64,000 nt of DNA from Ostrea edulis (Eukaryota): contig NC_079165.1 in the NCBI RefSeq assembly GCF_947568905.1, forward strand, positions 10,664,001 through 10,728,000, given 5' to 3'. Numbering within the stretch: the stretch's first letter is position 1; the number at the start of each line of letters is the position of its first letter. This document shows positions 1 to 22,100 of the stretch, piece by piece. A program made the position numbers and the translations under genes. Below the pieces are notes generated by a model. That model had not been told where the DNA came from and searched no databases. It saw nothing but the letters and a program-made list of their open reading frames with translations.

Positions 1-3000
1 GTTGCTGCTGAGGAGACGGTGAGGGAAGAAGTCTCCATTGAAGCAGTGTCTAAAGAGCAACCCGAAATTGAAATAGTTGTGAAAATCCCAGAGGAGAAAC
101 CCTCTGCGGAAGTCAAAGCAGAACTGGGTGTGGACGAAACCCCGGAAGAGGTGAAGGAGGAAGTCGAGGCGGAGTTTGCTCCCTCCGACGAGGCAGCAGA
201 GGAAGTGGGTGTTGAAATCGCACCTGAGGAATTTGCCGAGTTGGCCGAGACCGAAATCACTGAGGAACTGAAACCTACTGAAACACCCAAAGAGACCGTG
301 GGTGTAGAAATCACCGCTGCTGAAACAGTGGAGTCACTGGAAGAGAAACCCACTGTTGAAATCCCCGTCAAAGAACAAGCGGCTGTACAAATCGCTGTTG
401 CTGCTGAGGAGACGGTGAGGGAAGAAGTCTCCATTGAAGCAGTGTCTAAAGAGCAACCCGAAATTGAAATGGTTGTGGAAATCCCAGAGGAGAAACCCTC
501 TGCGGAAGTCAAAGCAGAACTGGGTGTGGACGAAACCCCGGAAGAGGTGAAGGAGGAAGTCGAGGCGGAGTTTGCTCCCTCCGACGAGGCAGCAGAGGAA
601 GTGGGTGTTGAAATCGCACCTGAGGAAGCTGCCGAGTTGGCCGAGACCGAAATCACTGAGGAACTGAAACCTACTGAAACACCCAAAGAGACCGTGGGTG
701 TAGAAATCACCGCTGCTGAAACAGTGGAGTCACTGGAAGAAAAACTCACTGTTGAAATCCCCGTCAAAGAACAAGCGGCTGTACAAATCGCTGTTGCTGC
801 TGAGGAAACGGTGAGGGAAGAAGTCTCCATTGAAGCAGTGTCTAAAGAGCAACCCGAAATTGAAATGGTTGTGGAAATCCCAGAGGAGAAACCCTCTGCG
901 GAAGTCAAAGCAGAACTGGGTGTGGACGAAACCCCGGAAGAGGTGAAGGAGGAAGTCGAGGCGGAGTTTGCTCCCTCCGACAAGGCAGCAGAGGAAGTGG
1001 GTGTTGAAATCGCACCTGAGGAAGCTGCCGAGTTGGCCGAGACCGAAATCACTGAGGAACTGAAACCTACTGAAACACCCAAAGAGACCGTGGGTGTAGA
1101 AATCACCTCTGCTGAAACAGTGGAGTCAGTGGAAGAAAAACCCACTGTTGAAATCCCCGTCAAAGAACAAGCGGCTGTACAAATCGCTGTTGCTGCTGAG
1201 GAGACGGTGAGGGAAGAAGTCTCCATTGAAGCAGTGTCTAAAGAGCAACCCGAAATTGAAATGGTTGTGAAAATCCCAGAGGAGAAACCCTCTGCGGAAG
1301 TCAAAGCAGAACTGGGTGTGGACGAAACCCCGGAAGAGGTGAAGGAGGAAGTCGAGGCGGAGTTTGCTCCCTCCGACGAGGCAGCAGAGGAAGTGGGTGT
1401 TGAAATCGCACCTGAGGAAGCTGCCGAGTTGGCCGAGACCGAAATCACTGAGGAACTGAAACCTACTGAAACACCCAAAGAGACCGTGGGTGTAGAAATC
1501 ACCGCTGCTGAAACAGTGGAGTCACTGGAAGAAAAACTCACTGTTGAAATCCCCGTCAAAGAACAAGCGGCTGTACAAATCGCTGTTGCTGCTGAGGAAA
1601 CGGTGAGGGAAGAAGTCTCCATTGAAGCAGTGTCTAAAGAGCAACCCGAAATTGAAATGGTTGTGGAAATCCCAGAGGAGAAACCCTCTGCGGAAGTCAA
1701 AGCAGAACTGGGTGTGGACGAAACCCCGGAAGAGGTGAAGGAGGAAGTCGAGGCGGAGTTTGCTCCCTCCGACAGGGCAGCAGAGGAAGTGGGTGTTGAA
1801 ATCGCACCTGAGGAGGCTGCCGAGTTGGCCGAGACCGAAATCACTGAGGAACTGAAACCTACTGAAACACCCAAAGAGACCGTGGGTGTAGAAATCACCG
1901 CTGCTAAAACAGTGGAGTCAGTGGAAGAAAAACCCACTGTTGAAATCCCCGTTAAAGAACAAGCGGCTGTACAAATCGCTGTTGCTGCTGAGGAGACGGT
2001 GAGGGAAGAAGTCTCCATTGAAGCAGTGTCTAAAGAGCAACCCGAAATTGAAATGGTTGTGGAAATCCCAGAGGAGAAACCCTCTGCGGAAGTCAAAGCA
2101 GAACTGGGTGTGGACGAAACCCCGGAAGAGGTGAAGGAGGAAGTCGAGGCGGAGTTTGCTCCCTCCGACAAGGCAGCAGAGGAAGTGGGTGTTGAAATCG
2201 CACCTGAGGAAGCTGCCGAGTTGGCCGAGACCGAAATCACTGAGGAACTGAAACCTACTGAAACACCCAAAGAGACCGTGGGTGTAGAAATCACCTCTGC
2301 TGAAACAGTGGAGTCAGTGGAAGAAAAACCCACTGTTGAAATCCCCGTCAAAGAACAAGCGGCTGTACAAATCGCTGTTGCTGCTGAGGAGACGGTGAGG
2401 GAAGAAGTCTCCATTGAAGCAGTGTCTAAAGAGCAACCCGAAATTGAAATGGTTGTGAAAATCCCAGAGGAGAAACCCTCTGCGGAAGTCAAAGCAGAAC
2501 TGGGTGTGGACGAAACCCCGGAAGAGGTGAAGGAGGAAGTCGAGGCGGAGTTTGCTCCCTCCGACAAGGAAGCAGAGGAAGTGGGTGTTGAAATCGCACC
2601 TGAGGAAGCTGCCGAGTTGGCCGAGACCGAAATCACTGAGGAACTGAAACCTACTGAAACACCCAAAGAGACCGTGGGTGTAGAAATCACAGCTGCTGAA
2701 ACAGTGGAAAAGAAACCCACTGTTGAAATCCCCGTCAAAGAACAAGCAGATGTACAAATCGCTGTTGCTGCTGAGGAGACGGTGAGGGAAGAAGTCTACA
2801 TTGAAGCAGTGTCTAAAGAGCAACCCGAAATTGAAATGGTTGTGGAAATCCCAGAGGAGAAACCCTCTGCGGAAGTCAAAGCAGAACTGGGTGTGGACGA
2901 AACCCCGGAAGAGGTGAAGGAGGAAGTCGAGGCGGAGTTTGCTCCCTCCGACAAGGCAGCAGAGGAAGTGGGTGTTGAAATCGCACCTGAGGAAGCTGCC

Positions 3001-6000
3001 GAGTTGGCCGAGACTGAAATCACTGAGGAACTGAAACCTACTGAAACACCCAAAGAGACCGTGGGTGTAGAAATCACAGCTGCTGAAACAGTGGAAAAGA
3101 AACCCACTGTTGAAATCCCCGTCAAAGAACAAGCAGATGTACAAATCGCTGTTGCTGCTGAGGAGACGGTGAGGGAAGAAGTCTCCATTGAAGCAGTGTC
3201 TAAAGAGCAACCCGAAATTGAAATGGTTGTGGAAATCCCAGAGGAGAAACCCTCTGCGGAAGTCAAAGCAGAACTGGGTGTGGACGAAACCCCGGAAGAG
3301 GTGAAGGAGGAAGTCGAGGCGGAGTTTGCTCCCTCCGACAAGGCAGCAGAGGAAGTGGGTGTTGAAATCGCACCTGAGGAAGCTGCCGAGTTGGCCGAGA
3401 CCGAAATCACTGAGGAACTGAAACCTACTGAAACACCCAAAGAGACCGTGGGTGTAGAAATCACCTCTGCTGAAACAGTGGAGTCACTGGAAGAGAAACC
3501 CACTGTTGAAATCCCCGTCAAAGAACAAGCGGCTGTACAAATCGCTGTTGCTGCTGAGGAGACGGTGAGGGAAGAAGTCTCCATTGAAGCAGTGTCTAAA
3601 GAGCAACCCGAAATTGAAATGGTTGTGGAAATCCCAGAGGAGAAACCCTCTGCGGAAGTCAAAGCAGAACTGGGTGTGGACGAAACCCCGGAAGAGGTGA
3701 AGGAGGAAGTCGAGGCGGAGTTTGCTCCCTCCGACAAGGAAGCAGAGGAAGTGGGTGTTGAAATCGCACCTGAGGAAGCTGCCGAGTTGGCCGAGACCGA
3801 AATCACTGAGGAACTGAAACCTACTGAAACACCCAAAGAGACCGTGGGTGTAGAAATCACAGCTGCTGAAACAGTGGAAAAGAAACCCACTGTTGAAATC
3901 CCCGTCAAAGTACAAGCAGATGTACAAATCGCTGTTGCTGCTGAGGAGACGGTGAGGGAAGAAGTCTCCATTGAAGCAGTGTCTAAAGAGCAACCCGAAA
4001 TTGAAATGGTTGTGGAAATCCCTGAGGAGAAACCCTCTGCGGAAGTCAAAGCAGAACTGGGTGTGGACGAAACCCCGGAAGAGGTGAAGGAGGAAGTCGA
4101 GGCGGAGTTTGCTCCCTCCGACAAGGCAGCAGAGGAAGTGGGTGTTGAAATCGCACCTGAGGAAGCTGCCGAGTTGGCCGAGACCGAAATCACTGAGGAA
4201 CTGAAACCTACTGAAACACCCAAAGAGACCGTGGGTGTAGAAATCACCTCTGCTGAAACAGTGGAGTCACTGGAAGAGAAACCCACTGTTGAAATCCCCG
4301 TCAAAGAACAAGCGGCTGTACAAATCGCTGTTGCTGCTGAGGAGACGGTGAGGGAAGAAGTCTCCATTGAAGCAGTGTCTAAAGAGCAACCCGAAATTGA
4401 AATGGTTGTGGAAATCCCAGAGGAGAAACCCTCTGCGGAAGTCAAAGCAGAACTGGGTGTGGACGAAACCCCGGAAGAGGTGAAGGAGGAAGTCGAGGCG
4501 GAGTTTGCTCCCTCCGACAAGGAAGCAGAGGAAGTGGGTGTTGAAATCGCACCTGAGGAAGCTGCCGAGTTGGCCGAGACCGAAATCACTGAGGAACTGA
4601 AACCTACTGAAACACCCAAAGAGACCGTGGGTGTAGAAATCACAGCTGCTGAAACAGTGGAAAAGAAACCCACTGTTGAAATCCCCGTCAAAGAACAAGC
4701 AGATGTACAAATCGCTGTTGCTGCTGAGGAGACGGTGAGGGAAGAAGTCTCCATTGAAGCAGTGTCTAAAGAGCAACCCGAAATTGAAATGGTTGTGGAA
4801 ATCCCTGAGGAGAAACCCTCTGCGGAAGTCAAAGCAGAACTGGGTGTGGACGAAACCCCGGAAGAGGTGAAGGAGGAAGTCGAGGCGGAGTTTGCTCCCT
4901 CCGACAAGGCAGCAGAGGAAGTGGGTGTTGAAATCGCACCTGAGGAAGCTGCCGAGTTGGCCGAGACCGAAATCACTGAGGAACTGAAACCTACTGAAAC
5001 ACCCAAAGAGACCGTGGGTGTAGAAATCACAGCTGCTGAAACAGTGGAAAAGAAACCCACTGTTGAAATCCCCGTCAAAGAACAAGCAGATGTACAAATC
5101 GCTGTTGCTGCTGAGGAGACGGTGAGGGAAGAAGTCTACATTGAAGCAGTGTCTAAAGAGCAACCCGAAATTGAAATGGTTGTGGAAATCCCAGAGGAGA
5201 AACCCTCTGCGGAAGTCAAAGCAGAACTGGGTGTGGACGAAACCCCGGAAGAGGTGAAGGAGGAAGTCGAGGCGGAGTTTGCTCCCTCCGACAAGGCAGC
5301 AGAGGAAGTGGGTGTTGAAATCGCACCTGAGGAAGCTGCCGAGTTGGCCGAGACCGAAATCACTGAGGAACTGAAACCTACTGAAACACCCAAAGAGACC
5401 GTGGGTGTAGAAATCACCGCTGCTGAAACAGTGGAGTCACTGGAAGAAAAACCCACTGTTGAAATCCCCGTCAAAGAACAAGCGGCTGTACAAATCGCTG
5501 TTGCTGCTGAGGAGACGGTGAGGGAAGAAGTCTCCATTGAAGCAGTGTCTAAAGAGCAACCCGAAATTGAAATGGTTGTGAAAATCCCAGAGGAGAAACC
5601 CTCTGCGGAAGTCAAAGCAGAACTGGGTGTGGACGAAACCCCGGAAGAGGTGAAGGAGGAAGTCGAGGCGGAGTTTGCTCCCTCCGACAAGGCAGCAGAG
5701 GAAGTGGGTGTTGAAATCGCACCTGAGGAAGCTGCCGAGTTGGCCGAGACCGAAATCACTGAGGAACTGAAACCTACTGAAACACCCAAAGAGACCGTGG
5801 GTGTAGAAATCACCGCTGCTGAAACAGTGGAGTCACTGGAAGAAAAACTCACTGTTGAAATCCCCGTCAAAGAACAAGCGGCTGTACAAATCGCTGTTGC
5901 TGCTGAGGAGACGGTGAGTGAAGAAGTCTCCATTGAAGCAGTGTCTAAAGAGCAACCCGAAATTGAAATGGTTGTGGAAATCCCAGAGGAGAAACCCTCT

Positions 6001-8222
6001 GCGGAAGTCAAAGCAGAACTGGGTGTGGACGAAACCCCGGAAGAGGTGAAGGAGGAAGTCGAGGCGGAGTTTGCTCCCTCCGACAAGGCAGCAGAGGAAG
6101 TGGGTGTTGAAATCGCACCTGAGGAAGCTGCCGAGTTGGCCGAGACCGAAATCACTGAGGAACTGAAACCTACTGAAACACCCAAAGAGACCGTGGGTGT
6201 AGAAATCACCGCTGCTGAAACAGTGGAGTCAGTGGAAGAGAAACCCACTGTTGAAATCCCCGTCAAAGAACAAGCGGCTGTACAAATCGCTGTTGCTGCT
6301 GAGGAGACGGTGAGGGAAGAAGTCTCCATTGAAGCAGTGTCTAAAGAGCAACCCGAAATTGAAATGGTTGTGGAAATCCCAGAGGAGAAACCCTCTGCGG
6401 AAGTCAAAGCAGAACTGGGTGTGGACGAAACCCCGGAAGAGGTGAAGGAGGAAGTCGAGGCGGAGTTTGCTCCCTCCGACAAGGCAGCAGAGGAAGTGGG
6501 TGTTGAAATCGCACCTGAGGAAGCTGCCGAGTTGGCCGAGACCGAAATCACTGAGGAACTGAAACCTACTGAAACACCCAAAGAGACCGTGGGTGTAGAA
6601 ATCACCGCTGCTGAAACAGTGGAGTCACTGGAAGAAAAACTCACTGTTGAAATCCCCGTCAAAGAACAAGCGGCTGTACAAATCGCTGTTGCTGCTGAGG
6701 AAACGGTGAGGGAAGAAGTCTCCATTGAAGCAGTGTCTAAAGAGCAACCCGAAATTGAAATGGTTGTGGAAATCCCAGAGGAGAAACCCTCTGCGGAAGT
6801 CAAAGCAGAACTGGGTGTGGACGAAACCCCGGAAGAGGTGAAGGAGGAAGTCGAGGCGGAGTTTGCTCCCTCCGACAAGGCAGCAGAGGAAGTGGGTGTT
6901 GAAATCGCACCTGAGGAAGCTGCCGAGTTGGCCGAGACCAAAATCACTGAGGAACTGAAACCTACTGAAACACCCAAAGAGACCTTGGGTGTAGAAATCA
7001 CCTCTGCTGAAACAGTGGAGTCACTGGAAGAGAAACCCACTGTTGAAATCCCCGTCAAAGAACAAGCGGCTGTACAAATCGCAGTTGCTGCTGAGGAGAC
7101 GGTGAGGGAAGAAGTCTCCATTGAAGCAGTGTCTAAAGAGCAACCCGAAATTGAAATGGTTGTGGAAATCCCAGAGGAGAAACCCTCTGCGGAAGTCAAA
7201 GCAGAACTGGGTGTGGACGAAACCCCGGAAGAGGTGAAGGAGGAAGTCGAGGCGGAGTTTGCTCCCTCCGACAAGGCAGTAGAGGAAGTGGGTGTTGAAA
7301 TCGCACCTGAGGAAGCTGCCGAGTTGGCCGAGACCGAAATCACTGAGGAACTGAAACCTACTGAAACACCCAAAGAGACCGTGGGTGTAGAAATCACCGC
7401 TGCTGAAACAGTGGAGTCACTGGAAGAGAAACCCACTGTTGAAATCCCGACCAAAGATCAAGCGGCTGTACAAATCGCTGTTGCTGCTGAGGAGACGGTG
7501 AGGGAAGAAGTCTCCATTGAAGCAGTGTCTAAAGAGCAACCCGAAATTGAAATGGTTGTGGAAATCCCAGAGGAGAAACCCTCTGCGGAAGTCAAAGCAG
7601 AACTGGGTGTGGACGAAACCCCGGAAGAGGTGAAGGAGGAAGTCGAGGCGGAGTTTGCTCCCTCCGACAAGGCAGCAGAGGAAGTGGGTGTTGAAATCGC
7701 ACCTGAGGAAGCTGCCGAGTTGGCCGAGACCGAAATCACTGAGGAACTGAAACCTACTGAAACACCCAAAGAGACCGTGGGTGTAGAAATCACCGCTGCT
7801 GAAACAGTGGAGTCAGTGGAAGAAAAACCCACTGTTGAAATCCCCGTCAAAGAACAAGCGGCTGTACAAATCGCTGTTGCTGCTGAGGAGACGGTGAGGG
7901 AAGAAGTCTCCATTGAAGCAGTGTCTAAAGAGCAACCCGAAATTGAAATGGTTGTGGAAATCCCAGAGGAGAAACCCTCTGCGGAAGTCAAAGCAGAACT
8001 GGGTGTGGACAAAACCCCGGAAGAGGTGAAGGAGGAAGTCGAGGCGGAGTTTGCTCCCTCCGACAAGGCAGCAGAGGAAGTGGGTGTTGAAATCGCACCT
8101 GAGGAAGCTGCCGAGTTGGCCGAGACCGAAATCACTGAGGAACTGAAACCTACTGAAACACCCAAAGAGACCGTGGGTGTAGAAATCACCTCTGCTGAAA
8201 CAGTGGAGTCATTGGAAGAGAA
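1..8222 (+). repeat. Coding tandem array: 20 complete units plus a partial one; 15 units of 396 bp (132 aa) and 5 of 387 bp (129 aa)
   Basis: Unit starts (gttgctgctgagga) at 1, 397, 793, 1189, 1585, 1981, 2377, 2764, 3151, 3547, 3934, 4330, 4717, 5104, 5500, 5896, 6292, 6688, 7084, 7480, 7876. Confidence 0.97.
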
Positions 8223-8434
8223 ATTCACGATTGAAAATGAGGAAACAGTTGTGAAAATTGCACCTGATTATGAAATATTGAATGTCTTGTCTAAATCTGA
8301 CCTAAATAAATCAAATAGGTCACATGATATGAGTGTGGTTGATAGTACAGATCAAGACTTTGATTTCAATTTAAAAGAAAACTTAATATCATCCAAAAAA
8401 GATAGTGTAAATGTGTCAGAAACTATACATGAGG
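1..8434 (+). CDS. Exon 1 (5' end outside window): giant Glu/Val/Ala/Pro/Thr-rich PEVK-like repeat exon
   Basis: Frame 1 is open from base 1. Donor GAG G|GTAAGG after 8434; alternative same-phase donor GAA G|GTATCA after 8506. Confidence 0.85.
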
Positions 8435-13100: not shown

Positions 13101-16100
13101 GACCTCAAGGTCAAAATTAAACGTTTTTACAATGGATTCGTGTCAGGGCCATGACTTCTTTATTCTTTGACATAGGCATACCATATTTGACACATGAGTG
13201 TATCACCATGAGACGATGTGTCAGGTACCTTCATTACCTCTATATGACCTTGAACTTTCACCTCAAGGTCAAAATTGATTATAGGGTTTTGACATAGTCA
13301 TACCATAAGACATGGATGTATCACCATGAGACTATGTGTCATGTACATTCATGACCTCTTTATGACCTTGACCTTTGATCTCAAGGTCAAAATTATAGGT
13401 TTATACCATGGATTTGTGTTCGCACTATATCTTCCATTTTCTTCTACAAAGGCATACTATATTTTTACACTCAGGAAAGAGGTAATTTATGCCTATTAAC
13501 AACACCCTTTGGGAGATTGGGGTAAGCAGGGGGCATTCTTATTGAGCATTGCTCACAGTACCTCTTGTTTGTTTTAAAAGTGCCTGTTCTTTTTGGTGCC
13601 AAAGTCTTCTGAAACTATCAGGTTAAAAGCATTCATTGTAAGTTATACTGATATGATGGCATAATTATTAGTGATCAATTATGCAAAGAAAAAGGGAAGA
13701 AAAATATATATTCATAATGAAAAATAGAAACATCTTTAAAATATCCTCAATCATTCCACAAATCACAGTTACATCAGTGGATCCAAGATATCACAAAAGG
13801 ATAATCAAATGAAGGTTCAGACAATGTTTTTATGTTATTGCAATGAAACTTGAAAGAAAAATGGTATGATAGAAAACCCATGGGTTGCCCCCCCCCCCCC
13901 CCCCCCCCCCCCCTCTCTCTTAAAATTGCTTAGCTGGTGGGTGCAGGCTAGGCCCACACTCCTGAATTTTGCATAGAATATAAGAAGAAAGAAATCGGTT
14001 CTGAATAACATGATTATGGGTTCCTGTAGATCTATTTCAGCATTAAATACATTGCAATATATGAATCTAACTCTTTCAGGAATAAAAATTTGAACAAACG
14101 TTACTTTATTTTCATTACATCAGTTTTACATCCTGTCCTCAAGCATCCTCAAACATCTACAAGTACATGTACATATATATAAAGCAACTTCTGATCTTGA
14201 CACTACTTGTATGAATTTAATCATTTATGTTTGACCGCAATCTAAATCTACATGAACTTATTGCAGACTGTCACTTCACCACAATTTGTTGTCATTATTG
14301 AGGACCTCAAAACTGAGGAAGGCTCTGAGGCAAAATTCATGGTCAAGGTTCGAGGTGAACCAACTCCAGAGGTCATGTGGTTCCATGAGAACGAACCAAT
14401 CAAAGACGATGACATCTACAAGATCATGGCTGGTGAGGAGGGTGAAGTAGTCCTGTATCTGCCTGAGGTGTTCATAGAGGATGCCGGTGTATACACGGTG
14501 AAAGCTGTCAATGAGGCCGGCGAAGTCTCCTGCTCAGCAATCCTCACAGTTCTTCAAGGTGAGTTGATTTACTCATTGAGTTTGTAGCATACCTGTAAAT
14601 CAGAAAGCACCAAAGAGATAGAAGTGGAGGAAACGCCTTCTGTATAATGGGTATTTCCTGCAGGTGGAAATTTTGTGACTTGATGATCCCAAGATATATT
14701 CTGCATTTCCAATTTCTGCAGTTGCAATATACCTATATATTCTTATAGGTATATTGCAAGTTTTATTTTTGTGGATTTTTCCTGTCTGCAAAATTCCACA
14801 CAAAAAATGGACAACCACAGAAAATACCCATAATGCAATATTTTGGAATGTTGTATATTCATGAACTTTCACCCTTAGGGAGGAAAGAAACATTATCTTG
14901 AAAGTTTAGAAATTGATGAAAAATATCTTAAGTATTTTAGAAATTGTTGAGGGAAGATTACCCATTCTTCATTTTGCAGAGGAGCTGGAAGATACAGAAG
15001 ACATCAAGGAGACACCTAAAGCAGAGTCAATCGAGGAAACACCTGCGAAACCGTTCACAATGCCAGATGCTGAACAACTGGACTTCAGAGCTGTACTCAA
15101 AAGCAAAGTGTAAGTTCTGTTTTATCATGCTTTATCTTTAGTTATAGTATTAACAAATCACCAAGTATCCTTATTATATTCAGAGTATTGACTATGATAC
15201 TACATTATTGTATTTTTGTAATGTTATCAAGAGATGTAAATTTAAGATTTTCTATCCTTATTTTAATATGAATCATTTGATTGTATAGCATACAGCATGC
15301 CTCCCATGTAAAAATGTCACTGTATGCTCTTCTTTGCATGCAATTTATAGCAAGACCAAATCGAACGAGAGCTTTGAAACTGAACAGCTGGATTTTAGAA
15401 GTGCGCTTAAAACTAAAGTGTAAGTCATACCCGGTGATGGAATCTGTGATGAATTTTCTGAATGATTGTCATTTTTTGAGTTTTATTGACCAGCTAAAGT
15501 TAAATATTTCATAAACAACTCTCTGTTCCTCATCAGGAAAACAAAGGCAAACCAAGAATTTGAGTCAAAACAACTCGACTTCCGAGGTGCTCTCAAATCA
15601 GAGCATGTGTAAGTTTCCTCGTTAAACTCTTAATCCTGTGGATTGTATTGGGATAAAACTGTCAGTTAATTTTTTTTTGTAAATCAATCTGTAACAGTTT
15701 TTGGCTTGTTTTGTATTCATACTCCCACAATTAACAACAGTAGATATACATATAAGACATATATTCCTCCTTTGACAGTGTGCCATTTAACAGATTTTGG
15801 ACTAACAACAGCCTTCAGTTTTGTACATATACTTATAGCATGCTTACATTATGTATATTCTAACAGACAAACCAAAGTGAACCAACAGTTTGCGCATGAA
15901 CAGTTGGACTTCCGAGATGCTATCAAAGCTCGCCATGTGTAAGTCAACCACTGTTCTGGTTAGGTGTACTGTTGTCATTTAATCTAGACGTTTAAAAAAG
16001 ACGAAAAATAATCCATGTTAAGAAGTGTGTAGGCAGGGGACAATTTTTTACTGAGTGTAACACTGACTTGGCTAGGAGGAGATAAATATTATCATCAAAG

Positions 16101-19100
16101 GTCATGATAAGCTTATACACGCATGAAATAGTTTGATCACATCATAAGATGTTCATGCAGTGCATGGTATGTGTTTTGCATGTCTTCCAGGGAAACTAAA
16201 GTCAACCAGCAGTTCCGGCATGAACAGTTAGATTTTAGAGAAGTCTTAAAAACAGAGACTGTGTAAGTACCACTAAGAGTGTGTGAGATTGTTGTATTAA
16301 GATGTGTAAGTACCATTTACAGTGTGTGAGATTGTTGTATTGAGATGTGTAAGTACCATTCACAGTGTGTGAGATTATTGTATTGAGATGTGTAAGTACC
16401 ACTAAGAGTGTGTGAGATTGTTGTATTGAGATGTGTAAGTATCATTCACAGTGTGTGAGATTGTTGTATTGAGATGTGTAAGTACCACTAAGAGTGTGTG
16501 AGATTGTTGTATTGAGATGTGTAAGTACCATTCACAGTGTGTGAGATTGTTGTATTGAGTTCTTCATTTGAATGACACCTTTTAATGCATGCTGTCTGCT
16601 TTTGCATGTTCACAGTGAGACCACATTTAATCAACAATTTCCTCATGAGCAGCTGGATTTCAGATCAGTACTCAAAGCCGACCGGTAAGGCACAGTGAGA
16701 GGGGTCTATTGTAAGACTACAGTGAGAGGGGTCTGTTGTAAGACTGCTGTTTAAGTCTGTAATTCTGACAATAACATGTGCCCAATCTTCTGTTTGCAGT
16801 GAATCCAGTGAAGAAATCACCCAAGAAGAGACTGTCATTGAGGTTTCCAAGAAACCAGAGGAGGAGGTACCTCAGGTGTCCCAGATAGAGGAAGTAGAAC
16901 TGGTGGCTCCTAAATTTATCACCAGAATTGACGACATCAAAGTGGAAGAAGGAGAAGAGGTCAAGTTTATTGCCAAGGTCACAGGCACACCCACTCCTGA
17001 GGTCACATGGCACCATGACAATGAGGTCATCAAAGAAGACAGTGATATATACAAAGTGTTGCCAGGAGAGGAAGGGGAGGTCACTCTATTGCTTACAGAG
17101 GCCTTTCCTGAGGATTCGGGTGTTTACACTGTCACTGCCTCAAATGCCGTCGGACGGGCGGAATGTACAGCCATGCTGACTGTCTCTGGTAAGCAATTAA
17201 CGCATTCATTTGCATTTTAGGTATAAGGATATCTATTTCAGAAAGTGGATTACTAAAATGACAGTGTCTCTTTCTGTAGAATTAATTGAAGATGAAGAAC
17301 AGGTTCCAGAAGAACAAGTTGAGTTGATTGAAAGCAAAGAAATTATTAAAGAGGAGGCAGCTGTCAAAATACAGGCAATGTTCCGAGGATACAAGGTTTG
17401 CATTTACAAACTACACCAGTGATATCACACATGTAGAAACATTTACACATCACACCAGTGATATCACACATGTAGAAACATTTACACATCACACCAGTGA
17501 TATCACATGTAGAAACATTTACACATCACATCAGTGATATCACACATGTAGAAACATTTACACATCACACCAGTGATATCACACATGTAGAAACATTTAC
17601 ACATCACACCAGTGATATCACATTTATAAACATTTACACATCACACCAGTGATATCTCATGTAGAAACATTTACACATCACACCAGTGATATCACATGTA
17701 TAAACATTTACACATCACACCAGTGATATCACACATGTAGAAACATTTACACATCACACCAGTGATATCACATGTAGAAACATTTACACATCACACCAGT
17801 GATATCACACATGTAGAAACATTTACACATCACACCAGTGATATCACATATATAAACATTTACACATCACACCAGTGATATCACATGTATAAACATATAC
17901 ACATCACACCAGTGATATCACATGTATAAACATATACACATCACACCAGTGATATCACACATGTAGAAACATTTACACATCACACCAGTGATATCACATA
18001 TATAAACATTTACACATCACACCAGTGATATCACACATGTAGAAACATTTACACATCACACCAGTGATATCACACATGTAGAAACATTTACACATCACAC
18101 CAGTGATATCACACATGTAGAAACATTTACACATCACACCAGTGATATCACATGTAGAAACATTTACACATCACACCAGTGATATCACACATGTAGAAAC
18201 ATTTACACATCACACCAGTGATATCACACATGTAGAAACATTTACACATCACACCAGTGATATCACACATGTAGAAACATTTACACATCACACCAGTGAT
18301 ATCTCATGTAGAAACATTTACACATCACACCAGTGATATCACACATGTAGAAACATTTACACATCACACCAGTGATATCACACATGTAGAAACATTTACA
18401 CATCACACCAGTGATATCACATGTAGAAACATTTACACATCACACCAGTGATATCACACATGTAGAAACATTTACACATCACACCAGTGATATCACACAT
18501 GTAGAAACATTTACACATCACACCAGTGATATCACACATGTAGAAACATTTACACATCACACCAGTAATATCACATGTAGAAACATTTCTATCCTAGCAT
18601 CAAGTCCAACATCACATCAACATGTGTTTTTATAACCGTGAAATGGTCAGGGTATATGGCGTTATCCTTTTCTGTCCATCATTTCATCACTTTGTCATTC
18701 TGCTCTTGTGTCATTCCATCATAGTTTTCCAGACTGTTATATTCTAATTTTGTTTCATTTCCTTTCAGTGTTATTTTCACATTATTGGACTATCAAACTT
18801 GAATATCAGCGGGGGGCATTTATGTCATACTGATCCTTTGTTGAACTGAGTCATAATGAGCTTGCAAATTTATTAATTTAACAGGCCAGAGAGGAGGTAA
18901 AGGACATGAAAGAGACCAAGGAACAGCAGGAAGTTCCCACATTTGAAGCTGATACGACCTTTGACATTAGTGACATCAGCACTGACACAGAGATTACAGC
19001 TCATCTTCCTAGAGAAGACCAATCACAGGATACACAGGTAGGTCATGACCTCTGTCACATGCACAGTCCAATGTCATCAATTATATACTCTAAAAATCAT

Positions 19101-22100
19101 TTCATAAGTGTATCCTGAGCACTAATCATATCAAACAGATAAAAGAGATTTTAAAGAGATTATCTTTAATACAAGTGAAATTTTTTTGATTGACTAATGA
19201 TTTCTTTAAAAAATATCAAAACTTAACTCTGAGCACTTAGAATGTAGAATAATCTAGTACTTGTCAAACTGATAGTATATATCAGCAGGTTAAATTCTCA
19301 GTGTAGTACTAGTATAGTTGTAGATGTTTTAACGATATCTAGTAAACAACATATCTGTATTATAATTAATCAGCAACAGAGATGTAAACTAAGTAGGAAA
19401 TCATTTTTGTTGAGCTAAGTTTGAAATGGAAGTTTTAATTGGCTGATGCGCACAAGTTTTAACATTATGGATGATTTAACAATTAAAAGCTAACATAACG
19501 ATTAAATCAAGAGTAGCTATCTTAACATAAATAATCAGGGCTCTAATTGAGTAACTTTCAATAGCTGGAGCTGCAAATACTTGTAGGTGATGGCTAACTA
19601 ATTCTGTAAATGTTTTGGTTTGGCTAGATTTTCCCAACATATACTCGATTTTATTTTCATAAGCATGGATTGCTAAAAAAAATTTATTTTGTTTGATGTC
19701 AGAGAAAGTTTTATTCAAAACTCTGCAACTGAAAGTTGGCATGACAATTTTGGCATGAATATTTTTGTTCTTTAAAATTTTACCCCAGAATGTTTAACTT
19801 TGCAAACATTTGACTGCAAAGCAATAATCACCAATGGTATGAACAAGAAGGCAACACAAAAAAATTAAAACTTTGGTTTATGATTTGATTAATCATTGTT
19901 GCTTTCTTGTTCTGTATATGTTTGCAGCTGTCTGCATGGTTAGCCGTAATTGTTTATTAGTGTTTGTTTACCACCTCACAGCAGCATTTGCATGCACACA
20001 GCAGCAATGACTACGATGTAGGCACTAAAGTCTATACCTGGAGGCTAGAGAGCACACCTCAAGACAGCTTTCCTCAATATGACACTTATTTGTTCAAGGA
20101 GGAACTTATTGTTACTGGCTCAGAGAGTGAGGATCAAGGATATCTTCCATCTGATGAGGAAGGTGAAAGGACCAAGACTGCAGAGGATGAAACTTCCACC
20201 TGGCATATAACAGGGGAAGAAGAAGAACCTCCTGCACTGCCTTCCACATCTGCTCCGGAGCTTACAACAGACTCCACTCTGCTCTCCAGCAGACCCGATA
20301 GGACATCAGAGGACTTCACATCCATACCAAGCTCCACTATACCCGAGGGCACAGATGAAGCATTCACTTTTGTAACAGCAGAAGATCTTCCAGAAAAACC
20401 TGTTGAGGAAGAGTTTACCATTCTCAGCAAGGAGGATATTCCACCTCTAGATCTTCAACTGGGAATTTCATCTTCTGATGAAAAAGAGGGATCTGAAAAA
20501 TCCTACCCTGAGGACTTCACTAGTTCTGATGAGGATGACAGCTCAGCTGAAAAACGTCTAGCAACTGAGGAAGAAAAGAAATTACTTGCCAAGCAAGATG
20601 GAATAGAAAAAGACAAAATTCCTCAAGAGAAACAAGACACAGGCGAAAGATCAGAGGAGTCTTCAACTTCAGAAGAGTCTGAAGGAGAAGATGGCTTTGT
20701 GAAACCTTCAATGCCAGACATTGTTCCCAAAGATTCCAACATTCTTGACAGGAGTTTTTCAAGTGAATCTGATGAAGAAGAGAAAGAACAAATAAAAGTT
20801 AAAGGTGTTCCATTACCTGATGGTTACAAAATGCCAAAAGCATCTTCACAGAAGGAAATTTCAGTGCCTGAAAAAGAACTTGAACAGCATCTCATTGAGG
20901 AGGAAATTGTTGTTCCATCAGAGGACAAACCAGATTTTGCAGGTCAAGTGATATCAGAAAAAGACACCATTCTTCAATTGGATAAGAATATCAAGGACAA
21001 ATTTGAGGGTTTCATTGAGGAAGGAAAAGATCATGGACCAACATCTATGGTGGACAAGGTCAGTCTTTGGGATGAGGAAAGTGAGGATGAAGAAAGAAAA
21101 CTTGTCCGAAAATTCTCTCCATTTGAAAAGTCAATGGATGAGCAACCTGTGAGTGATATCATCATTGAGGAAAATGAGGAAGATGCAATTAAACCTGATT
21201 TCAAACAGCAGGTTTCATTAGAGGAGAGTCAACCACCAGAGGCTGGGTTAATCACCCAAAAAGATTTGAAGGAAGGTGGTAAAGAAGGAAATAAGGAGTT
21301 GGTGGATCTATCTTTTGACAAGCTGTTGCAATCACCCACAGAAATGTCAGAAGAAAGAGAAATTGAGGAAGAATTTGAACAGCCTGAGTTGTATCAAAAG
21401 GACAGCTTTGCTCCAGAATTTGAAGTCAAACCGAAGGACATTTTCCATGCTGAACAGTATGATCTGTTTAGAGGTGTGCCAGAAAGAGATGAAGATTATG
21501 AGGAAGTTAGCATTGAGGAGGAAGAAATCATTGAGGAGGAAGAGGTTCACGATGAATTCATGGGTAGAGAATACATACTAGAGAATATTCCAGAAGAGGA
21601 GTCATTTGAAACTTCAGAGAATGAGGGATATACAGGAGAGGACCAACAGCTGAGCCCTGAGGAAACACGAACGAAACCAAGCAAAGATCAAACTTCTGAG
21701 GTAGGCCATTAACATAGAAGTGTAGCTTAGACAAATCAGAGGGTGGTTAGAGGATTCAGACAAAGGCAGCAAAACACTCACACAAATACCAATTAGTAGA
21801 TATTAACATCAGTCTCTTTGGTAAGTATTGTACAGATATATATTCATGTGTATTCCAGATATATAATGTGTATAAATATATATACGTCTTCACAAAGCTT
21901 TGGCTTATATCACTGTTTTGTCTTTTAACCTTCAAACAAATGGCCCTCAAGCATAATCTCTGTCCTCCCTGTATGTGTTTATTCAAATGTTCCATTATGT
22001 ATACATTTTTGTGATTATAATTGACTTTCAGGTATTTTCAGAAACATTAAGCATGAAATGATCCCTATTTTGAACAGCAGTATGAATAGATAGAGGGTGG

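What the first reader, a model, noticed from the sequence alone, without database searches (positions are those of the whole stretch)
17280..19037. Calmodulin-type IQ motif split by an intron, next to the actin-binding array
Seen: joining 17395 to 18885 gives EEAAVKIQAMFRGYK|AREEVKDMK. Known: this fits the IQxxxRGxxxR consensus and resembles the neuromodulin/neurogranin IQ (AAxKIQAxFRGHxxRK), which binds calmodulin or EF-hand light chains. Inference: Ca/calmodulin sensing one Ig domain downstream of the DFRxxL array could gate thin-filament attachment. The complete motif appears only after splicing.
Basis: partly seen in the sequence, partly recalled or inferred. Interest (0 to 1): 0.7.

Follow-up and report, generated by a model that had tools for sequence, protein, structure and literature searches.

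The report
IQ calmodulin-docking motif in mollusc titin-like gene
A giant titin-like muscle gene of a mollusc carries one real, expressed and conserved IQ motif, a short helix that usually holds calmodulin, split between two exons just after its actin-binding array; it is a new example of a kind already known from vertebrate obscurin.

Summary
Exon A (17280-17395) ends in ...AAVKIQAMFRGYK at a GT donor. Exon B (18885-19037) starts AREEVKDMK after an AG.

- Splicing: transcript contigs of two runs of a ~98%-identical organism read straight from 17395 into 18886 onwards.
- Profile: the spliced peptide passes Pfam IQ (28.7 bits against a cut-off of 20.3). Exon A alone only just passes (21.6).
- Copy number: the motif is unique in the window and the exon is single-copy in the genome.
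- Conservation: three related bivalve genomes and the limpet Lottia gigantea keep the motif after the same Ig domain, split at the same codon boundary. Between classes it is an island of identity in a divergent linker.
- Nearest solved relatives: axonemal IQs (RSP23, CFAP91, Sp17), not neurogranin.
- Nearest relative among giant muscle proteins: the obscurin IQ, which binds calmodulin independently of Ca2+.
- Modelled binding: calmodulin with the orthologous IQ peptide scored 0.65 against 0.02 for the best control. This may reflect the model's memory of solved complexes.

Best reading: a calmodulin or calmodulin-like docking site on a titin-like protein. Ca-gated release from actin is untested and is not favoured by what is known of MLCK. 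This is a new member of a known kind, of moderate interest.

The parts
16191..16684 (+). Last two DFRxxL exons of the actin-binding array (16191-16262 and 16616-16684), given for context
   Evidence: Joints with GT..AG in transcript contigs. The spliced translation shows ...EQLDFREVLK... and ...EQLDFRSVLK....
16800..17188 (+). Exon encoding an acidic linker plus one I-set Ig domain, directly upstream of the IQ exon
   Evidence: Joints 16684|16800 and 17188|17280. Pfam I-set 82.9 bits, E 1.7e-23.
17280..17395 (+). Exon A: acidic linker and the N-terminal half of the IQ motif (EEAAVKIQAMFRGYK). It enters in phase 1 and leaves in phase 0.
   Evidence: Pfam IQ on this exon alone scores 21.6 bits. 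Single copy in the genome.
17396..18884 (+). Phase-0 intron that splits the IQ motif, 1489 nt, with donor GTTTGC and acceptor ...TTTAACAG
   Evidence: The loose ends at 17396 in X1 and X2 equal 18886-18915. The same intron is 86-89 nt in three related genomes and about 631 nt in Lottia.
17401..18588 (.). 39-bp minisatellite of about 31 copies that fills the intron; not part of the protein
   Evidence: Tandem Repeats Finder, score 2068. Absent from the short introns of the relatives.
18885..19037 (+). Exon B: the C-terminal half of the IQ motif (AREEVKDMK) followed by a conserved acidic Ser/Thr-rich stretch. It is 153 nt, in phase 0 at both ends, so it could be skipped in frame.
   Evidence: Adding it raises the Pfam IQ score from 21.6 to 28.7 bits.
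19982..21700 (+). Next exon (boundaries inferred): 573 codons of acidic, probably disordered sequence lying between the IQ and the next Ig domains
   Evidence: AG at 19980-1 and GT at 21701-2, in frame with exon B. 66-74% identical ORFs in related genomes. The boundaries were not checked with reads.

Best explanation
This is a genuine, expressed IQ motif (Pfam PF00612) in the I-band-like part of a titin-like giant muscle protein gene of a mollusc.

The window shows, in order: a PEVK-like repeat array, Ig exons, an array of DFRxxL exons, one Ig, then the IQ, then about 620 residues of acidic linker, more Ig domains, and finally Ig-Fn3 repeats.

The motif is encoded across a phase-0 intron whose position is shared by bivalves and a gastropod. 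In this genome the intron has been inflated from about 90 nt to 1489 nt by a minisatellite.

Shown: the exons, use of the junction, the profile match, single-copy status, and conservation of the motif as an island in a divergent linker.

Inferred: the 23 or so residues EAAVKIQAMFRGYKAREEVKDMK form an amphipathic helix that holds calmodulin or a calmodulin-like light chain, most likely whether or not Ca2+ is present, as the same type of IQ does in vertebrate obscurin. In the model, the calmodulin C-lobe sits on the part encoded by exon A and the N-lobe reaches the part encoded by exon B. The tethered EF-hand protein would then be a resident Ca2+ sensor or adaptor close to the thin-filament anchors. 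What it regulates is unknown.
For: - Splice sites and translation.
- Transcript contigs: joints, and loose ends equal to exon B, in two runs.
- Stop-free spliced frame.
- Pfam IQ: 28.7 bits against a cut-off of 20.3, E 8.2e-7.
- Uniqueness: the only IQxxxRG in six frames, and the exon is single-copy in the 895-Mb genome.
- Three related genomes (L001, L005, L002-4): same Ig-IQ-exon B-big exon order, same split FRGFK|AREEVK, GT/AG kept.
- Lottia gigantea XP_009049556.1: DFRxxL x3, Ig, IQ, split at FRGYQ|AREQVK. UniParc protein P0123 has the same order. Both pass Pfam IQ.
- In the six-sequence alignment nearly all invariant columns fall inside the IQ.
- Same IQ type in giant Ig proteins of deuterostomes: obscurins, Saccoglossus unc-89/titin-like, Patiria MLCK-like. 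IQ plus the following Ig aligns collinearly.
- The obscurin IQ binds calmodulin with and without Ca2+ (PMC2196875).
- Model of calmodulin with P0123:3158-3200: score 0.65, best of 3 controls 0.02. That mark was reached by 51 of 78 solved complexes and 2 of 108 mismatched pairs. The three runs agree in at least 95% of contacts and the partner's pLDDT is at least 71. The interface covers 3166-3194, that is the IQ and both exon-encoded halves.
Against: - No binding was measured.
- The model used the orthologue's peptide (17 of 23 core residues identical), not the window's own spliced peptide. Peptides are outside the tool's calibration, and calmodulin-IQ complexes are well represented among solved structures, so the pass may be memory.
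- The junction 17395|18885 was seen in an organism 95-99% identical to the window, not in the 100%-identical RNA runs, which end inside exon A.
- The window's donor GTTTGC is weak.
- The tail of the motif is more acidic (AREEVKDMKE) than classical calmodulin-binding IQs.
- The genome has a very large calmodulin-like family (145 EF-hand matches), so the partner may not be calmodulin itself.
Confidence: 0.65

Rival explanations
1. One reading: Ca2+/calmodulin binding at the IQ switches the neighbouring DFRxxL array on or off actin, so that thin-filament attachment of the giant protein is gated by Ca2+.
For: - The IQ lies about 165 residues (a linker plus one Ig) after the last DFRxxL.
- This adjacency is kept in Lottia and in P0123.
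- Young et al. note that a constitutively bound calmodulin could still confer Ca2+ sensitivity (PMC2196875).
- From my own knowledge, not tested here: S100A1/Ca2+ modulates binding of titin's PEVK region to actin.
Against: - Complete IQ motifs of this type bind calmodulin independently of Ca2+ in the nearest precedent (PMC2196875).
- MLCK anchored by DFRXXL is reported not to be released from thin filaments by Ca2+ or Ca2+-calmodulin (PMC2196421).
- A folded Ig domain separates the IQ from the array.
- Nothing here tests actin binding.
Confidence: 0.1
2. The IQ holds a specialised EF-hand protein rather than calmodulin, for example a myosin-type light chain or one of the many calmodulin-like proteins of this genome, and serves as a structural or tissue-specific adaptor.
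For: - IQ motifs bind light chains as well as calmodulin (PMC2196875).
- The genome has at least 145 EF-hand_7 matches, with large tandem clusters on contig C5.
- The tool states that a pass does not tell which member of a family binds.
Against: - The motif is of the complete type, and the nearest muscle precedent pulled out calmodulin in six of seven yeast two-hybrid clones (PMC2196875).
- The motif is conserved between mollusc classes and resembles deuterostome IQs, which fits a conserved partner such as calmodulin better than a lineage-specific one.
Confidence: 0.15
3. It is an IQ-like helix with no EF-hand partner: a conserved linker helix kept for another reason, such as mechanics, another binding partner or splicing signals.
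For: - Pfam IQ is a 21-position profile and matches many helices.
- The closest solved matches sit in axonemal complexes, where the partner was not examined here.
- The C-terminal half is acidic.
Against: - Conservation is concentrated exactly on the residues that define the IQ consensus (I, Q, R, G, R) across mollusc classes, not on the exon ends.
- The model passed against its controls.
Confidence: 0.1

Closest known systems
Obscurin IQ motif (vertebrates; Young et al. 2001, PMC2196875)
   Same: - Same sequence type: obscurins AA[VI]KIQAAFKGYK[AV]RK against AAVKIQAMFRGYKAREE here, 12-14 of 23 identical.
- It sits in non-modular linker of a giant Ig-rich sarcomeric protein.
- In the orthologue P0123, the IQ plus the following Ig aligns collinearly with obscurin's IQ plus Ig.
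- It lacks the PKC serine of neuromodulin, as here.
- It was shown to bind calmodulin independently of Ca2+.
   Different: - Obscurin's IQ is followed by SH3-DH-PH and kinase domains. This gene shows PEVK-like arrays, DFRxxL exons and Ig-Fn3 repeats, and no RhoGEF was seen in the window.
- In this gene the IQ is followed by about 620 disordered residues before the next Ig.
- A review states that invertebrate obscurins (UNC-89, Drosophila) lack the IQ (PMC12812942).
- Common descent of the two IQs is not established.
Axonemal IQ motifs: Sp17, Chlamydomonas RSP23, CFAP91
   Same: These are the best matches among all solved structures: RSP23 E 2.7e-8, CFAP91 8.9e-6, Sp17 1.2e-5. Sp17 reads AALKIQAAFRGHLAREEVKKMK against AAVKIQAMFRGYKAREEVKDMK here.
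   Different: They are small or ciliary proteins with other domains. There are no Ig domains and no muscle context. The likeness is confined to about 25-35 residues.
Neuromodulin (GAP-43) / neurogranin IQ
   Different: - The match is weak (neurogranin IQ E 0.2, 15 bits).
- The PKC-site serine (SFR) is Met here and Val or Ala in relatives.
- The tail here is acidic rather than basic.
- Those proteins are small and neuronal.
Smooth-muscle MLCK N-terminus (DFRXXL actin anchors plus a calmodulin-regulated kinase)
   Same: A DFRxxL array followed by PEVK-like and Ig modules. A calmodulin site lies on the same polypeptide. A starfish MLCK-like giant protein has both DFRxxL motifs and an IQ.
   Different: - Calmodulin binds MLCK at the kinase's regulatory segment, not at an IQ.
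- Its actin anchoring is reported to be insensitive to Ca2+-calmodulin (PMC2196421).
- No kinase was seen in this window.

Membership tests
IQ calmodulin-binding motif (Pfam PF00612) | Profile score above the curated gathering cut-off | tested here: met
   The spliced peptide scores 28.7 bits against 20.3 (E 8.2e-7) and exon A alone 21.6. The orthologues score 27.8 and 29.0 bits.
IQ calmodulin-binding motif (Pfam PF00612) | Complete consensus [ILV]QxxxRGxxx[RK] | tested here: met
   IQAMFRGYKAR after splicing. The unspliced DNA reads RGYKVC and does not fit.
IQ calmodulin-binding motif (Pfam PF00612) | Binds calmodulin or another EF-hand light chain | tested here: inconclusive
   A model only. 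Calmodulin with the orthologous peptide scored 0.65, best control 0.02. The mark was reached by 51 of 78 solved and 2 of 108 mismatched pairs. Contact agreement was at least 95% and partner pLDDT at least 71. The pass may be memory, and no measurement was made.
Neuromodulin/neurogranin-type IQ | PKC-phosphorylated serine directly before FRG (IQASFRG) | tested here: not met
   The window has IQAMFRG. Relatives have IQSMFRG, IQSVFRG, IQSAFRG or IQAAFRG. None has Ser directly before the Phe.
Neuromodulin/neurogranin-type IQ | Closest sequence relatives are these proteins | tested here: not met
   Neurogranin IQ E 0.2, against Sp17 1.2e-5 and RSP23 2.7e-8.
Obscurin-type IQ of giant sarcomeric proteins | IQ in a non-modular linker between Ig domains of a giant Ig-rich muscle protein | tested here: met
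   An Ig exon lies directly upstream, and Ig exons follow downstream after the acidic exon. P0123 has Ig-IQ-Ig.
Obscurin-type IQ of giant sarcomeric proteins | Host protein is an obscurin/UNC-89 (SH3-DH-PH, tandem kinases) | tested here: not met
   The window downstream of the IQ shows Ig, a second PEVK-like array and Ig-Fn3 repeats, and no SH3 or DH-PH was recognised on reading the ORFs. The gene beyond the window was not examined, so this holds for the window only.

The most novel reading that the evidence does not exclude
The IQ-plus-Ig cassette may be an ancient bilaterian module of giant sarcomeric proteins. It is shared by vertebrate obscurin, hemichordate unc-89/titin-like proteins, an echinoderm MLCK-like protein and molluscan titin-like proteins. 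Reviews, in contrast, treat the obscurin IQ as absent from invertebrates. In molluscs the tethered calmodulin, sitting next to nine MLCK-type actin anchors, would make the link between the titin-like protein and the thin filament sensitive to Ca2+. That could bear on passive tension or on catch-like holding.
Probability: 0.12. Interest if true: 0.65.

Novelty: new member of a known kind. Interest (0 to 1): 0.4.

Why it matters
IQ motifs, and the calmodulin-binding IQ of obscurin, are well known. Titin is described as lacking one (PMC6509138), and invertebrate obscurins are said to lack it too (PMC12812942).

This report shows a conserved, expressed IQ in a molluscan titin-like protein, placed directly after an array of MLCK-type actin anchors. 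It also shows the same type of IQ in hemichordate and echinoderm giant proteins. Together these give a concrete, testable site where Ca2+ signalling could meet the elastic filament of invertebrate muscle. They also suggest that calmodulin docking on giant sarcomeric proteins is older than vertebrates.

The motif is already present in public predicted proteins, for example Lottia XP_009049556.1, although no paper that my searches found discusses it.

Tried and rejected
- The contigs of a more distant relative (L006-L012, Ig 58% identical) have no IQ in the roughly 1.3 kb downstream of the Ig. They are too short to say anything.
- The word search with the big acidic exon found only genomic ORFs and no transcript-derived protein.
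- P0123's contig is not on record, so its taxon stays unknown.
- The SRA and ENA ids of the related contigs occur in no paper held.
- No intronless full-length calmodulin exists in this genome. The canonical gene (L014) is split by introns. A calmodulin with identical core residues was therefore taken from the protein search.
The orthologue's peptide was used instead.
- Literature searches for an IQ motif in invertebrate titin, twitchin, sallimus or projectin, or in bivalve titin, found nothing specific.
- The search of earlier findings by words found nothing.

Full report
**What is in the sequence**

Exon A (17280-17395) follows an AG. It starts with two bases of a split codon and ends on a codon boundary at GT (17396-7). 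It encodes LIEDEEQVPEEQVELIESKEIIKEEAAVKIQAMFRGYK.

Exon B (18885-19037) follows AG (18883-4), is 153 nt long in phase 0 at both ends, and is followed by GT. It encodes AREEVKDMKETKEQQEVPTFEADTTFDISDISTDTEITAHLPREDQSQDTQ.

The 1489-nt intron is almost entirely a 39-bp minisatellite of about 31 copies (17401-18588).

**Is the junction used?**

I therefore laid 14200-17600.

- All four runs show the junction 17188|17280.
- In X1 and X2 the contig that lies on 17279-17396 runs on with CCAGAGAGGAGGTAAAGGACATGAAAGAGA. This is exactly window 18886-18915, so exon A is joined to exon B.
- One such contig is 4669 nt long and continues about 4 kb further.

Caveat: X1 and X2 carry a different organism label and are 95-99% identical to the window. 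The 100%-identical RNA contigs (X3, X4) end inside exon A.

I joined eleven exons from 14265 to 21709. The junctions up to 17280 were seen in reads. The 17395|18885 junction rests on the loose ends, and the big exon's acceptor at 19982 is inferred. The result is one open frame with no stop. It encodes Ig, six DFRxxL exons, a linker plus Ig, the IQ, exon B and a long acidic exon.

**Is it an IQ motif, and more than chance?**

- The spliced peptide scores 28.7 bits on Pfam IQ (cut-off 20.3, E 8.2e-7).
- Exon A alone scores 21.6, so the core is in exon A and exon B adds about 7 bits.
- It is the only IQxxxRG in all six frames of the window.
- The exon is single-copy in the 895-Mb genome.

**The gene**

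The window holds:

- a PEVK-like array of 21 copies of a 132-residue unit (1-8223);
- Ig exons and DFRxxL exons;
- the IQ;
- a 573-codon acidic exon;
- many more Ig exons;
- a second Pro/Glu/Thr/Val-rich array;
- Ig-Fn3 repeats.

**Conservation**

Genomic contigs of three related species (Ig exon 81-83% identical) have the same order of Ig, exon A, exon B and big exon. They have the same split (FRGFK|AREEVK) and intact GT/AG sites. Their introns are only 86-89 nt, so the long intron here is a lineage-specific minisatellite expansion.

An exhaustive search with the Ig exon returned giant Ig proteins. Twelve of the best 150 carry an IQ of the same AAxKIQxxF[RK]G type. Two of these have the mollusc architecture:

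- Lottia gigantea XP_009049556.1: DFRxxL x3, Ig, IQ.
- An unnamed UniParc protein, P0123: DFRxxL x4, Ig, IQ, Ig.

Both pass Pfam IQ. In the Lottia genome the motif is split at the same codon boundary, FRGYQ|AREQVK. The intron position therefore predates the split between bivalves and gastropods. In an alignment of the six mollusc sequences the linker is barely alignable, and nearly all invariant columns lie within AAxKIQxxFRGxxAREx​VK.

**Relatives outside molluscs**

The other ten proteins are vertebrate obscurins (coelacanth, fishes, lamprey, opossum), Saccoglossus titin-like/unc-89-like proteins (one of them with four IQs) and a starfish MLCK-like protein that also has DFRxxL motifs. The IQ plus following Ig of P0123 aligns collinearly with the IQ plus Ig of obscurins and of the Saccoglossus proteins. 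Much of that score is generic Ig similarity.

Among solved structures the best matches are axonemal IQs:

| Match | E-value |
|---|---|
| RSP23 | 2.7e-8 |
| CFAP91 | 8.9e-6 |
| Sp17 | 1.2e-5 |
| Neurogranin IQ | 0.2 |

The PKC serine of that family is absent here.

**Function**

Young et al. showed that the obscurin IQ binds calmodulin in yeast two-hybrid screens and on beads, with or without Ca2+. They suggested that the bound calmodulin might still act as a Ca2+ sensor (PMC2196875).

The canonical calmodulin gene of this genome is split by introns (L014). I therefore used a database calmodulin whose residues 12-140 are identical to the two calmodulin exons read in L014, and folded it with the orthologous IQ segment P0123:3158-3200.

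- Score 0.65; best of three controls 0.02.
- That mark was reached by 51 of 78 solved complexes and 2 of 108 mismatched pairs.
- The runs agree in at least 95% of contacts, and the partner's pLDDT is at least 71.
- The calmodulin C-lobe contacts the AAIKIQSAF part. The N-lobe contacts G3180 and A3183, on either side of the exon junction. The interface runs on to residue 3194, so both exon-encoded halves take part.

This supports binding but does not show it. Peptides are outside the tool's calibration, and similar complexes are already solved, so the pass may be memory.

**The gating idea**

The idea is attractive because the IQ-DFRxxL adjacency is conserved. However, the nearest precedents speak against a simple Ca2+ switch. 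Calmodulin binding to obscurin's IQ does not depend on Ca2+. MLCK anchored by DFRXXL is reported not to leave thin filaments with Ca2+-calmodulin (PMC2196421).

**Novelty**

Reviews describe titin as lacking an IQ (PMC6509138) and invertebrate obscurins as lacking it (PMC12812942). My literature searches found no mention of an IQ in molluscan or other invertebrate titin-like proteins. The motif does, however, sit in public predicted proteins.

I rate it a new member of a known kind. It is real and conserved, of moderate interest, and its function remains to be measured.

Noticed in passing
window 17396-18884: The intron that splits the IQ is 1489 nt here but 86-89 nt in three related genomes. 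The difference is a 39-bp minisatellite of about 31 copies that starts 5 nt after the donor. Each unit contains the palindrome GTGATATCAC and GT dinucleotides that could act as decoy donors. The real donor here is a weak GTTTGC, against GTGAAT or GTAAGT in the relatives.
   Followed up: partly
window 18930-18995 (exon B): The acidic Ser/Thr-rich stretch ADTTFDISDISTDTE after the IQ is identical in all four bivalve genomes, and the preceding EVPTFE differs only in L002 (DVPTLE). Overall it is better conserved than the acidic linker before the IQ. It may be a phosphorylation cluster or a second binding site.
   Followed up: no
window 15109-16800: The transcript contigs show alternative joints from 15109 to 15351, to 16191 and to 16800. 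Some transcripts therefore skip three or all five of the following DFRxxL exons, which are each 69-72 nt and in frame. The tool marks these three joints 'between: not known'.
   Followed up: partly
L035 = G000:C2:3468727-3471816, minus strand: A 143-residue open frame with three IQ motifs (...DPEVEKAATKIQAGFKGYKTRK...), and a fourth in a neighbouring frame. It looks like a small multi-IQ protein of the neuromodulin/igloo kind. The DPxxEKAAxKIQ lead-in resembles that of obscurin and the Saccoglossus IQs.
   Followed up: no
G000 contig C5, about 15.04-15.19 Mb and 17.67-17.94 Mb: Large tandem clusters of calmodulin-like EF-hand exons. The genome has 145 matches over the Pfam cut-off, which is a lower bound. 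The canonical calmodulin gene (L014) lies in the first cluster and is split by introns.
   Followed up: partly
window 17333: One RNA contig (X3) ends inside exon A and runs on with eight A's that are not in the genome. This may be internal priming or an artefact of a very small library.
   Followed up: no
P0150 (Saccoglossus kowalevskii titin-like, XP_006823017.1): Four identical IQ motifs spaced 432-457 residues apart, each followed by an Ig. The IQ-Ig unit has been tandemly duplicated in a hemichordate giant protein.
   Followed up: no
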